A stretch of 64,000 nt of DNA, from contig CM121342.1 in the NCBI GenBank assembly GCA_051530055.1, positions 1 through 64,000 of the forward strand, given 5' to 3'. Numbering within the stretch: position 1 is the first letter of the stretch; every line of letters starts with the position of its first letter. A program made the translations under genes and the position numbers. The notes under the pieces were generated by a model, which worked only from the letters and a program-made list of their open reading frames with translations, was not told the origin of the DNA and did not search any database. Positions 14,401 through 15,729 of the stretch are shown here, in pieces. The stretch comes from Neoechinorhynchus agilis (taxonomy: Eukaryota; Animalia; Acanthocephala).

Positions 14401-15696
14401 GTCCCTTTTTGCTGCGACAAGACGCGCTCTTGTTTCACCCACACAAGCTGCGCACTTGCTTAATGACTACGCGGTGCCGGTCCTACTGGCAAAGCTCGCT
14501 GCCAGTTGGGATATATCGTCTACCAATCTAAGGTGTCTATGCGAGCAGTGGAGATCCAAGCTTAAGTGTCTCCTCAAGCTTGCGAAGAACATCAGCGACG
14601 GCGCATTTTACCTGCCACTTTCCAGTAGTGGTCTAGGCTTCCGAAACCTAGAACACGAGGTACAATGTACAAGGCAAAAAGCCCTAGATACAGTGGTAGA
14701 TAAATTCGGAGGCGCAATAGATCTTCACAAAGAACTCAGTTCAGTTAACGACTACTTCCGCAGGCTAAGTGGCGGGCTTGGCAGCCGGAGCGAGCTTAGT
14801 GAGTCCTCTCCACATCGGCTTTTCCTAAATACACAAATAAAAAAGTGGAGAGAGGCAACGACGCAAGCGGTTGGTCTTGACTGCTTTACGGAAGGACATG
14901 TTGACCGGAGTCTCGCAACGTTCCGTTACAGACAAGGGCATCATCGCTCTTACGTGGAGCATGTTAAGTTACGGCTCCAATTGTTGGAAGTAGGTACAGT
15001 TCTGAACCGAATGGATCATCAGCGCGGTAAATCATGCAGGCATTGCAGTTTCCCGGTTGAGTCCTGTGCTCATGCCCTCAACGGATGTGAGTATGCCTCT
15101 GCAATAATGACCCGGCGTCACGACAAGGTGCAATCGCGCCTTGTTTGGACACTGACGAATAAGCCTGGAGCGCGATTTGAGGTTGAGCTGCAGAACCGAT
15201 TTCATGATGAAAAAGGTAACCTGCATAAGCCTGACCTCATTTTGCGCGACAGAACTTCGGGCAAGGTGTACATTGCTGATGTTGCAGTGTACTATGAGAC
15301 AGGACGAGACAGGGCTGAAGCCGTCATGAGTGGCAAAGCAGATAAATACCAACCCTTAGTCCCCGTAGTTGCGAAACACTATGAAATCCCGACATATAAG
15401 GTTTCCACTATCGGATTAGCTGTGGGTTCGCATGGCACCTTCAGCCCTTCTTTGTTACGCCGCCTGAAGCTCCTCTCCGTGGGTCAACGCACTGCGCTGA
15501 ATATGGCAAAGACTGCGGCCGAGCAGTCGCTGGCTGTGTTCCATGTTTTCATGGGCAGACGTTGGGCCTTAAGAGATACAACGGACAACGTCTAATTAAC
15601 AGCCAAAGGACAAAGAGAAAAGGAAACAAACATAAGATTTTCAGTAAAAAATAATTGTCAACAAGCATGAGAGAGAATTACTAAATAAATGAAGCT

Positions 15697-15697
<1 letters not shown>
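11486..15697 (+). mobile_element. R2-like element B, near full length, at the 28S R2 site
   Basis: 5' junction TAACTATGACT|AATGAC; 3' junction AATAAATGAAGCTG|TAGCCAAATGCC. N-terminal zinc-finger region (11487-12253) has 3 stops and at least one frameshift; main ORF is intact. Confidence 0.96.
12254..15595 (+). CDS. R2-like ORF, 1113 aa: OTU-like segment, RT, CCHC knuckle, RLE
   Basis: GPDKIT, WRPITISS, LDIKSAFDTVSH, GVKQGDPLSP, YADD, KYLG, CRHC..HALNGC, RHD, KPDL..YIADVAVYYE..K.DKY. Confidence 0.95.
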   Translation: MPLIQTSQDRQHGHLNTSREPLQVNSSSIIGTPSSQVSDVIDKEDYPPSARSLALAGGMDTDSSCELMSSHKQSNSRCEGDTNKADCPTVPTVFTAAEAYECVTEELSGNNLHPRYRKFLECEGSTLRCWNGPLDGQFVDAAATRYAQYLRCGWSAELPTVSRARAIGLKIVKLRQGPRQALCAVAYHVLGNPSLWNRVLTKLTVEVQNNLEYYAQVARSVFDANLLVDYHLSSLRQGSVVSPMFVLFAAAYSVDFTAHNPWERQERRVFCPGLGTRVFNIWIHDSGTYPCVRCRGPNRFQDRELKRRRNRALYFANTSKLAAEVFKDAGRRECTLQAQDTVEHYRKLFEGDALSDNAPESTVAQDQQVSDEQWPSITTAEVQETLKGMKTSSASGPDKITIRDARAFDPHLLGMTLLFNYVIQYGSPPQAWLEAKTILLPKTSTSPQKLKIQSGWRPITISSILMRVSHRIVLRRLQKVCCLDDVQTAFDPSACLANLLTLRSVLREKRANRQPLAVAVLDIKSAFDTVSHAAVEEALRNSGSPNYLRRYVMNSYRGSFTKIRMASARPSNPIEFRRGVKQGDPLSPLLFALTVDEALREVRNLELGAQLKGGIRLSHLVYADDVLLMADDCANLQQQIDILQQKLKEKRLFLSPEKCQTYTHSYKYNMLTIDRESCIHVNGTRLKAIVEGDPVKYLGGTPFKETTLDEGLNVLESLFAATRRALVSPTQAAHLLNDYAVPVLLAKLAASWDISSTNLRCLCEQWRSKLKCLLKLAKNISDGAFYLPLSSSGLGFRNLEHEVQCTRQKALDTVVDKFGGAIDLHKELSSVNDYFRRLSGGLGSRSELSESSPHRLFLNTQIKKWREATTQAVGLDCFTEGHVDRSLATFRYRQGHHRSYVEHVKLRLQLLEVGTVLNRMDHQRGKSCRHCSFPVESCAHALNGCEYASAIMTRRHDKVQSRLVWTLTNKPGARFEVELQNRFHDEKGNLHKPDLILRDRTSGKVYIADVAVYYETGRDRAEAVMSGKADKYQPLVPVVAKHYEIPTYKVSTIGLAVGSHGTFSPSLLRRLKLLSVGQRTALNMAKTAAEQSLAVFHVFMGRRWALRDTTDNV

Positions 15698-15729
<32 letters not shown>

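What the first reader, a model, noticed from the sequence alone, without database searches (positions are those of the whole stretch)
15684..15702. Invariant 3' terminus AATAAAT-N7|TAGC in seven junctions, with no poly(A)
Seen: the N7 spacer is GAAGCTG (15698), TCGACCT (29266 minus and 55025), GCATGCC (41677 minus), GCGACTT (54011), AATCCTC (54570) and GCAGCTT (56124). That is six different spacers behind otherwise unalignable 3'UTRs, always exactly 7 nt. Established: many R2s end in short poly(A), and the protein recognises 3'UTR structure. Inference: a ruler-type cis signal that fixes where reverse transcription starts or where the RNA 3' end is made; it also resembles a polyadenylation hexamer.
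Basis: seen in the sequence. Interest (0 to 1): 0.8.

Follow-up and report, generated by a model that had tools for sequence, protein, structure and literature searches.

The report
Poly(A)-signal-like box ending worm R2 elements
Every R2 jumping gene of thorny-headed worms examined here ends with the box AATAAA(T) 7-9 bases before the ribosomal-gene junction and has no poly(A) tail; the box looks like an ordinary mRNA end-forming signal, and public RNA data could test whether it explains how R2 RNA gets its 3' end, which is not known.

Summary
AATAAAT-N7-TAGC occurs 7 times in the window, where 0.05 are expected. All seven are R2 3' junctions with 28S rDNA, from six lineages. None has a poly(A) tail.

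I then collected 13 more junctions of the same R2 clade:
- Neoechinorhynchus agilis, which is probably the window's own genome
- Pomphorhynchus laevis
- three unnamed assemblies
- one TARA contig

Across 18 lineages, AATAAA is present in 18 and AATAAAT in 17. The gap from the hexamer to the junction is 8 nt in 14 lineages, 7 nt in 3 and 9 nt in 1. So the spacing is narrow, but it is not "always exactly 7".

Two more features stand out:
- **Second box.** UGUAA lies 13-34 nt upstream of the hexamer in 10 of 18 lineages, against 1.8 expected.
- **No structure.** The terminal 90 nt are unusually unstructured, unlike other R2 3' UTRs.

Among 49 unrelated R2 3' ends from metagenomes, A[AT]TAAA is also concentrated 0-18 nt from the junction.

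Best reading (0.45): a host-type cleavage/polyadenylation signal ends the R2 RNA a few nt inside 28S, and reverse transcription starts at the annealed 28S tail, so the poly(A) is never copied. Rival (0.30): a linear box recognised by the reverse transcriptase at a fixed distance from its active site.

The scan's notes held no earlier mention of this motif. A grasshopper R2 paper noted a similar AATAAA in passing.

The parts
15684..15701 (+). Lineage A 3' terminus: AATAAAT box (15684-15690), 7-nt spacer GAAGCTG (15691-15697), then 28S TAGC. The junction is at 15697/15698.
   Evidence: The 28S flank 15698-15785 is 98% identical to the 28S 3' part.
15596..15697 (+). 3' UTR of lineage A: 102 nt, A-rich, with no stable fold.
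   Evidence: The ORF 12254-15595 stops at 15595. The fold is -5.4 kcal/mol with z +0.47.
12254..15595 (+). Longest R2 ORF in the window (1113 aa): reverse transcriptase (YADD), CCHC knuckle and KPD..D..K endonuclease. The N-terminal finger region upstream lies in other frames, so this copy is damaged.
29263..29280 (-). Lineage B, copy 1, 3' terminus: AATAAAT (29280-29274), spacer TCGACCT, then TAGC. It is followed by only 34 nt of 28S.
41674..41691 (-). Lineage E 3' terminus: AATAAAT (41691-41685), spacer GCATGCC, then TAGC. E is a deletion derivative with no reverse-transcriptase ORF. It is followed by 33-34 nt of 28S.
53997..54014 (+). Lineage C 3' terminus: AATAAAT, spacer GCGACTT, then TAGC. 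The ORF ends at 53865 and the UTR is 145 nt.
54556..54573 (+). Lineage D 3' terminus: AATAAAT, spacer AATCCTC, then TAGC. This copy is 5'-truncated to about 480 nt.
55011..55028 (+). Lineage B, copy 2, 3' terminus: AATAAAT, spacer TCGACCT, then TAGC.
56110..56127 (+). Lineage F 3' terminus: AATAAAT, spacer GCAGCTT, then TAGC. F is about 1065 nt with no reverse-transcriptase ORF. It is followed by the full 28S 3' part (56124-57400).
54984..54988 (+). Upstream TGTAA box of lineage B copy 2, at -41 from the junction.
53969..53973 (+). Upstream TGTAA box of lineage C, at -42. A second TGTA lies at -32.
54530..54534 (+). Upstream TGTAA box of lineage D, at -40.

Best explanation
The box is the core of a host-type cleavage and polyadenylation signal carried at the extreme 3' end of this R2 clade. 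The signal would have three parts: an upstream UGUA(A) element, the AAUAAA hexamer, and host 28S sequence serving as the downstream region.

The hexamer sits only 7-9 nt from the junction. Cleavage 10-30 nt downstream of it, the usual range in animals (my own knowledge), would therefore always fall inside the first nucleotides of 28S. The likely site is the CAAA at +5 to +8. This would give an R2 RNA that ends in a few nt of rRNA followed by poly(A).

[quoted passage not shown] Reverse transcription then starts at the last R2 base. The poly(A) tail overhangs and is never copied. This explains why genomic copies end precisely, with no poly(A), and why the hexamer stays close to the junction: a hexamer further upstream would cause cleavage inside the element.

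Shown here: the motifs, their conservation, their spacing, the lack of RNA structure, and their recurrence in other R2 clades.

Inferred: that the host machinery acts on this RNA, where cleavage falls, and that a poly(A) tail is added.
For: 1. The invariant core is exactly the canonical hexamer. AATAAA is present in 18 of 18 lineages from at least four host sources. The one lineage that changes the 7th base (T to C) and the spacing (+1) keeps the hexamer.

2. UGUAA is the most enriched 5-mer at -60 to -15. It occurs in 10 of 18 lineages against 1.76 in shuffles (z 6.6), at variable distance 13-34 nt upstream of the hexamer. UGUA is the known upstream auxiliary element of animal poly(A) sites (my own knowledge).

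3. The last 90 nt are A/U-rich and less folded than shuffles: median MFE -6.9 kcal/mol, z +0.71, 0 of 18 with z below -2. Other R2 3' ends give -24.4, z -1.13, 13 of 51 (P = 2.7e-7). RNAalifold finds no consensus pair. So the structured modules that bind R2 proteins in Bombyx and in birds are absent.

4. Among 49 unrelated R2 3' ends, A[AT]TAAA clusters 0-18 nt from the junction: 9 hits in the last 10 nt against about 0.4 per 10-nt bin upstream. Five lineages have it at 5-10 nt against 0.45 in shuffles, and 0 of 2000 shuffles reach 5. These lineages lie in separate parts of the reverse-transcriptase tree.

5. A grasshopper R2 has AATAAA 11 nt from its end and no poly(A) (PMC3954772).

6. Published biochemistry fits the predicted RNA. 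Avian R2 proteins need at least 4 nt of rRNA on the template 3' end, and the engineered optimum is 4 nt of rRNA plus 22 A (PMC13580325, PMC11601368). R2 RNA 3' processing is stated to be unknown (PMC11194090).
Against: - No RNA data were available here, so cleavage and poly(A) addition are unobserved.
- R2 is held to be co-transcribed with rRNA by RNA polymerase I. Such transcripts are not usual substrates for the polyadenylation machinery in animals.
- The 7th base, U, is conserved in 17 of 18 lineages. The spacing is tighter (7-9 nt) than an ordinary poly(A) signal would require. Both hint at a more exact reader than the host machinery.
- UGUA does not co-occur significantly with the hexamer in the unrelated metagenome lineages (4 of 10 against 7 of 41, P = 0.19).
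- No retrocopy carrying a 28S tail plus poly(A) was found in the DNA held.
- About 80% of R2 lineages lack such a hexamer, so it is not a general R2 requirement.
Confidence: 0.45

Rival explanations
1. The box is a linear recognition site for the R2 protein itself. On this reading the single-stranded AAUAAAU, perhaps together with UGUAA, is what the reverse transcriptase grips to select its own RNA. The 6-8 nt that follow are the single-stranded linker threading the template 3' end into the active site. The spacing is then a true molecular ruler.
For: - The heptamer, not just the hexamer, is conserved in 17 of 18 lineages, and the spacing stays within 1 nt.
- No other conserved sequence or structure exists in these short UTRs (74 to about 275 nt) to give the protein its template specificity.
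- Known R2 complexes have this geometry. In Bombyx the bound P2 strand (nt 236-242 of 248) is followed by 6 single-stranded nt. In avian and turtle R2 a bound stem is followed by 4 single-stranded nt, and an A-rich hinge (GGAAAAG) is read base-specifically (PMC10499050, PMC11601368).
- Lineages E, F and Jn have no reverse-transcriptase ORF but keep the box, as expected of a signal needed in cis for mobilisation.
Against: - It does not predict that the motif should be the cellular poly(A) hexamer, or that the second box should be UGUA.
- It does not predict that unrelated R2 clades, with different RNA-binding solutions, should place the same hexamers next to the junction.
- Two linear boxes at variable mutual distance (13-34 nt) are an awkward target for one rigid protein surface.
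- The most divergent lineage changes the 7th base and the spacing but not the hexamer.
Confidence: 0.3
2. Both at once, or another host RNA-binding factor. The box may be read by the host 3'-end machinery for export, stability or translation, and also help template selection. Alternatively it may bind some other A/U-motif protein.
For: The evidence is mixed: hexamer identity and UGUA point to the host machinery, while the conserved 7th base and the tight spacing point to something more exact. Earlier notes of this scan report that these elements have no 5' UTR or complete ribozyme, which suggests unusual mRNA biology. I did not test those notes.
Against: Nothing specific supports it. It is less parsimonious. 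The boxes do not fit a Pumilio-type UGUANAUA site when read by eye.
Confidence: 0.15
3. No function. The shared ending is merely inherited from a recent common ancestor, or was homogenised by recombination or template switching between lineages.
For: All lineages belong to one R2 clade.
Against: - Seven adjacent invariant positions sit between a UTR at near-random similarity (median z 1.0, excluding the B1/B2 pair) and a spacer that has diverged at most sites.
- C-terminal proteins are only 34-64% identical.
- The spacers differ between lineages, so the ends were not simply copied from one lineage to another.
- The box persists across at least two acanthocephalan classes and in further hosts.
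Confidence: 0.03

Closest known systems
Canonical animal cleavage/polyadenylation signal (upstream UGUA, AAUAAA, downstream U/GU-rich region), as used by LINE-1 and many other non-LTR elements
   Same: The exact hexamer, upstream UGUA(A) boxes at variable distance, and an A/U-rich unstructured context.
   Different: Genomic copies carry no poly(A). The hexamer lies only 7-9 nt from the element's end, so the cleavage site and downstream region would have to be host 28S rRNA sequence. The transcript is presumed to be made by RNA polymerase I. Use of the signal is unproven.
Bombyx mori R2 3' UTR core (P1, J1/2, P2; the 43-nt 'R2 tag'), PMC10499050
   Same: It sits at the same place in the same kind of element. 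A protein-bound segment 7 nt long (nt 236-242) is followed by a 6-nt single-stranded run to the RNA 3' end. Downstream 28S homology gives a precise start.
   Different: The Bombyx core is built from base-paired stems. Here no partner strand or consensus pairing exists, and the conserved element is a linear A/U box.
Avian/testudine (A-clade) R2 3' UTR: pseudoknot, hinge, stem, with an rRNA tail requirement (PMC11601368, PMC13580325)
   Same: An A-rich single-stranded motif (GGAAAAG) is read base-specifically. A short single-stranded linker (4 nt) precedes the primer-paired rRNA tail. The best engineered template is UTR + 4 nt rRNA + A22, which is what a hexamer 8 nt from the junction would be expected to produce naturally.
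   Different: The A-clade motif lies about 35 nt from the end, inside a pseudoknot-stem fold. The acanthocephalan UTR ends are unstructured, and the motif differs.
Grasshopper Eyprepocnemis plorans R2 (EploR2), PMC3954772
   Same: [quoted passage not shown] The hexamer is therefore 11 nt from the junction.
   Different: This is a single element in an arthropod, noted in passing. No conservation, spacing or UGUA analysis was done, and it belongs to a different R2 clade.
Metagenome R2 lineages L004/L074 (AATAAAC-N7|TAGCC), L076, L071, L061, L066
   Same: Poly(A)-type hexamers lie 6-18 nt from the same 28S junction. L004 and L074 have the same 8-nt hexamer-to-junction spacing.
   Different: The L004 reverse transcriptase lies in a different, well-supported part of the tree from window lineage A. 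These are therefore independent occurrences, and the hosts are unknown.

Membership tests
R2 non-LTR retrotransposon | 3' end joined to 28S rDNA exactly at the R2 site (...AAGG|TAGCCAAATGCC...) | tested here: met
   All 7 window junctions and 13 junctions in related loci are followed by TAGCCAAATGCC or a close variant, continuing into 28S.
R2 non-LTR retrotransposon | Single ORF with a reverse transcriptase followed by a CCHC knuckle and a restriction-like endonuclease (KPD...D...K) | tested here: met
   Lineage A matches Pfam RVT_1 at E = 9e-33. It has YADD, C..C...H...C at residue 928 and KPD..D..K at residue 992. It groups with R2-type proteins in the tree.
R2 non-LTR retrotransposon | Structured 3' UTR recognised by the element's protein | tested here: not met
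   There is no consensus pairing. Single folds are no better than shuffles. Clade median z is +0.71 against -1.13 for other R2s. This concerns the mode of recognition, not membership by site and protein.
Canonical cleavage/polyadenylation signal | AAUAAA (or a close variant) hexamer | tested here: met
   18 of 18 lineages.
Canonical cleavage/polyadenylation signal | Upstream UGUA auxiliary element | tested here: met
   TGTA occurs in 11 of 18 and TGTAA in 10 of 18 lineages within -60 to -15. TGTAA is the top enriched 5-mer, z 6.6. Seven lineages lack an exact TGTA; five of them have TGTC or TGTG at the equivalent place.
Canonical cleavage/polyadenylation signal | Downstream U- or GU-rich element within about 30 nt of the cleavage site | tested here: inconclusive
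   The downstream sequence is fixed host 28S (UGCCUCGUCAUCU at +9 to +21, GUGACGUG at +28 to +35). It is compatible with such an element, but it cannot vary, so no conservation test is possible.
Canonical cleavage/polyadenylation signal | Transcript cleaved 10-30 nt downstream of the hexamer and given a poly(A) tail | not testable with these tools
   No RNA reads could be reached. No DNA copy with a 28S tail plus poly(A) was found in the DNA held.
Protein-binding 3' module of R2 (Bombyx and A-clade type) | Short single-stranded linker of fixed length between the recognised element and the template 3' end | tested here: met
   6-8 nt follow the heptamer in 18 of 18 lineages. Compare 6 nt in Bombyx and 4 nt in A-clade complexes. 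This is a resemblance in geometry only.
Protein-binding 3' module of R2 (Bombyx and A-clade type) | Direct, specific binding of the module by the element's protein | not testable with these tools
   This needs recombinant protein and RNA.

The most novel reading that the evidence does not exclude
A whole clade of R2 elements in thorny-headed worms and their relatives has replaced the structured, protein-bound 3' UTR with a plain host poly(A) site. About a fifth of R2 lineages elsewhere show a similar hexamer near the junction. The site is placed so that the cell's own machinery cuts the rRNA co-transcript a few nucleotides into 28S and adds a tail. That would produce the 'UTR + short rRNA tail + poly(A)' template that genome engineers arrived at empirically (R4A22). 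It would answer how R2 RNA 3' ends are made in these lineages.
Probability: 0.35. Interest if true: 0.8.

Novelty: new variant of a known kind. Interest (0 to 1): 0.6.

Why it matters
How R2 RNA gets its 3' end is an acknowledged gap. It is also not known whether the natural template carries downstream rRNA (PMC11194090).

This clade offers a simple, sequence-defined hypothesis. It can be tested at once with the public poly(A)-captured RNA-seq of N. agilis (BioProject PRJNA1223661).

If the box is a working poly(A) site, it shows a retrotransposon borrowing host 3'-end processing inside an rRNA transcript. It would also explain why the engineered R4A22 tail works so well.

If instead the box is read by the R2 protein, it is the shortest and simplest template tag known for an R2: a linear 7-mer plus a 7-nt linker. 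That would interest people building RNA-templated insertion tools.

Tried and rejected
1. Base-pairing partner for the box, equivalent to Bombyx P2. I searched the UTRs by eye for RUUURUU. Only lineage B has one (AUUUGUU). RNAalifold gives 0 pairs and single folds are not better than shuffles. Rejected.

2. The box as a mimic of the 28S target (CCAAAT..GC against TAGCCAAATGCC). This is seen in lineages B, C and E, but not in A2, G, H and others found later. Rejected.

3. Pairing of the box with the target DNA or with downstream 28S. No convincing complementarity by inspection. Rejected.

4. Pumilio-type site (UGUANAUA). The UGUAA boxes do not fit. Rejected.

5. The stack of 3' ends separated by 77, 175 and 34 nt of 28S (54011-56124) as a record of RNA 3' ends captured by template jumps. 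There is no A-run at the boundaries. The pattern is equally explained by insertions that duplicate part of the target and so regenerate an R2 site. I therefore drew no inference from it about RNA ends.

6. Closest outgroups. Contigs L001, L002 and L078 stop before any 28S junction. They say nothing about the motif.

7. Exact-sequence look-ups of the window's own R2 proteins, meant to reach transcript contigs, found nothing.

8. Co-occurrence of UGUA with the hexamer in unrelated R2 lineages is only a trend (P = 0.19).

9. The literature search found no prior description of this motif as a conserved feature. The three GCA_0287484xx assemblies could not be assigned to a species.
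Full report
**What is there**

The window is a scrambled stretch of rDNA. It holds 18S, 5.8S and 28S pieces (Rfam; self-comparison), broken by R2-type and Gypsy-type retroelements.

The pattern AATAAAT-N7-TAGC occurs seven times, where 0.05 are expected. These are the only seven copies of TAGCCAAATGCC in the window. That sequence is the 28S just downstream of the classic R2 insertion site. Each match is therefore an R2 3' junction.

No junction has a poly(A) run.

Comparison of upstream sequences shows six lineages:
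- A has the longest ORF (12254-15595). It carries RVT_1, YADD, a CCHC knuckle and KPD..D..K, with a 102-nt 3' UTR.
- B is present twice, at 86% identity with the same downstream context.
- C and D are 5'-truncated copies that keep the ORF C-terminus.
- E and F have no reverse-transcriptase ORF.

**Widening the sample**

Protein searches with the C-terminal part of lineages A and C led to contigs that carry more junctions of the same R2 clade.
- Neoechinorhynchus agilis GCA_051530055.1: loci L079, L080, L081 and L085. Its 28S flank matches the window's, so the window is probably from this species.
- Pomphorhynchus laevis: L086.
- Three unnamed assemblies, GCA_028748445, GCA_028748465 and GCA_028748485: L082-L084. 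Their 28S reads TAGCGAAATGCC.
- One TARA ocean contig: L087.

C-terminal protein identity to lineage A ranges from 64% down to 34%.

Every R2 junction in these loci has the box. Over 18 lineages (20 junctions), one search gives:

| Feature | Count |
|---|---|
| AATAAA present | 18 of 18 |
| AATAAAT present | 17 of 18 |
| Hexamer to junction, 8 nt | 14 |
| Hexamer to junction, 7 nt | 3 |
| Hexamer to junction, 9 nt | 1 |

The single 9-nt case, lineage K, is the most divergent N. agilis lineage. It reads AATAAAC followed by 8 nt.

The motif passes clearly. The spacing is narrow but not fixed.

**Conservation profile**

Anchored at the junction, positions -14 to -8 are invariant. Positions upstream carry almost no information. 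The spacer keeps a weak consensus: G at -7, C at -3 and a pyrimidine at -1 (first nine lineages).

Outside the last 14 nt the UTRs are close to random similarity. The median z is 1.0, and only the two B copies align well. Shared recent ancestry therefore cannot explain the box.

**Two further features**

First, an unbiased k-mer count in -60 to -15 puts TGTAA at the top. It occurs in 10 of 18 lineages against 1.76 in shuffles (z 6.6). It lies at variable distance, 13-34 nt upstream of the hexamer.

Second, the last 90 nt are A/U-rich (GC 0.28) and fold worse than their own shuffles:

| Set | Median MFE (kcal/mol) | Median z | Lineages with z below -2 |
|---|---|---|---|
| This clade (18 lineages) | -6.9 | +0.71 | 0 of 18 |
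| Other R2 3' ends (51 lineages) | -24.4 | -1.13 | 13 of 51 |

The difference is significant (Mann-Whitney P = 2.7e-7). RNAalifold finds no consensus pair.

**Other R2 elements**

One metagenome scan for non-G|TAGCCAAATGCC... gave 75 loci, which reduce to 49 distinct R2 3' ends with at least 260 nt upstream.
- A[AT]TAAA is concentrated next to the junction: 9 hits in the last 10 nt against about 0.4 per 10-nt bin further upstream. The distances are 0 (four times), 6, 8, 8, 9, 9 and 18.
- Five lineages carry it at 5-10 nt, against 0.45 in shuffles. None of 2000 shuffles reach 5.
- L004 has the same 8-nt spacing, but its reverse transcriptase lies far from lineage A in the tree. Lineage A forms its own clade with P0001 and P0002, with 100% support.
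- A grasshopper R2 paper records AATAAA 11 nt from the end of an element without poly(A) (PMC3954772).

Poly(A)-type hexamers just inside the 3' junction are therefore a recurrent, scattered R2 feature. In the acanthocephalan clade the feature has become universal.

**How it most likely works**

Published structures show that R2 proteins bind structured 3' UTR modules. A short single-stranded linker leads from the module to the template end: 6 nt in Bombyx and 4 nt in birds and turtles. A few nt of downstream 28S on the RNA pair with the nicked target and fix a precise start (PMC10499050, PMC11601368, PMC13580325). How the natural RNA 3' end is made is stated to be unknown (PMC11194090).

Against that background two readings compete.

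*Host-type poly(A) site.* This reading explains most of what is seen:
- why the motif is this particular hexamer
- why the second box is UGUA
- why the region is unstructured
- why unrelated clades converge on the same hexamers
- why the hexamer lies close to the junction, so that cleavage 10-30 nt downstream always falls in 28S and never inside the element

The predicted RNA is UTR, then a few nt of 28S, then poly(A). This matches the engineered optimum R4A22. Priming from the annealed 28S tail explains the absence of poly(A) in DNA copies.

*Linear recognition box for the R2 protein, at a set distance from the active site.* This reading better explains the conserved 7th base and the very narrow spacing. 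It also fits the need for some template-specificity signal in UTRs that have no other conserved feature.

A dual role or another factor gets 0.15, and no function 0.03. The remainder is unassigned. No RNA evidence could be reached with these tools, so cleavage and tailing are inferred and not shown.

**Comparison with the known, and novelty**

By insertion site and protein, these are R2 elements. Both features were tested and met. Their 3' end differs from the characterised R2 modules in being linear and unstructured. It resembles an ordinary mRNA poly(A) site in three tested respects: the hexamer, UGUA and the unstructured context.

The presence of AATAAA without poly(A) has been mentioned once, for a grasshopper R2. 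The following appear not to have been described in the papers I could search:
- clade-wide invariance of the box
- the 7-9 nt spacing
- the UGUAA box
- the lack of RNA structure
- the enrichment across R2 lineages generally

The scan's own notes held no earlier mention of the motif. I rate it a new variant of a known kind, with interest 0.6. It is a clean, well-supported pattern that makes an open question directly testable with existing public RNA data.

Noticed in passing
Metagenome loci, e.g. L029, L034, L055, L060, L019, L007, L006, L047, L023 (3' ends next to TAGCC): A different terminal motif, (TG)TCTGAG, is the most enriched hexamer family in the last 20 nt of unrelated R2 lineages. TCTGAG occurs in 8 lineages against 0.35 expected, usually 4-9 nt from the junction. 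This suggests that short clade-specific terminal boxes are a general R2 feature.
   Followed up: partly
window 54011-56135; also 29233-29266 and 41645-41677 (minus strand): R2 3' ends are stacked and separated by exactly 77, 175 and 34 nt of the 28S sequence that lies just downstream of the R2 site. The 34-nt piece recurs in front of the same unit three times. There are no A-runs at the boundaries. One explanation is an insertion that duplicates 34 bp of target, as the 126-bp duplication reported for rotifer R9 does (recalled from memory, not checked in the papers read here). This would regenerate an intact R2 site that is then hit again. Template jumping is the alternative.
   Followed up: partly
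L085:2696-2760: In this N. agilis junction the 28S flank reads TAGCA and then jumps to about +50 of 28S (AGATTCCTACTGTCCC). This is an internal deletion of roughly 44 nt right after the junction.
   Followed up: no
L081:4500-14300, matching window 19474-20798: Another N. agilis chromosome region (CM121341.1, 67-88 kb) carries many overlapping matches to window 19474-20798. The matches are offset by about 454 nt, so the repeated unit next to the R2 fragments contains an internal tandem repeat.
   Followed up: no
L086:4001-9682: The annotated P. laevis 'gene' GJ496_009786 spans 5.7 kb and is stitched across two decayed R2 copies and their 28S flanks. It is an annotation artefact over rDNA debris rather than a host gene.
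   Followed up: no
window 11440-12254: Upstream of the 1113-aa ORF of lineage A, the zinc-finger-coding region lies in other reading frames and contains stop codons. This best-preserved copy in the window is itself damaged at its N-terminus.
   Followed up: partly
28S flanks of L082-L084, L086 and L087, compared with the metagenome loci: The 28S just downstream of the R2 site reads GGATCAATGAGAT in P. laevis, the three unnamed assemblies and the TARA contig. N. agilis has GGATTATTGAGAT, and nearly all other metagenome eukaryotes have GGATTAACGAGAT. This may be a lineage marker that could help name the unidentified hosts.
   Followed up: no
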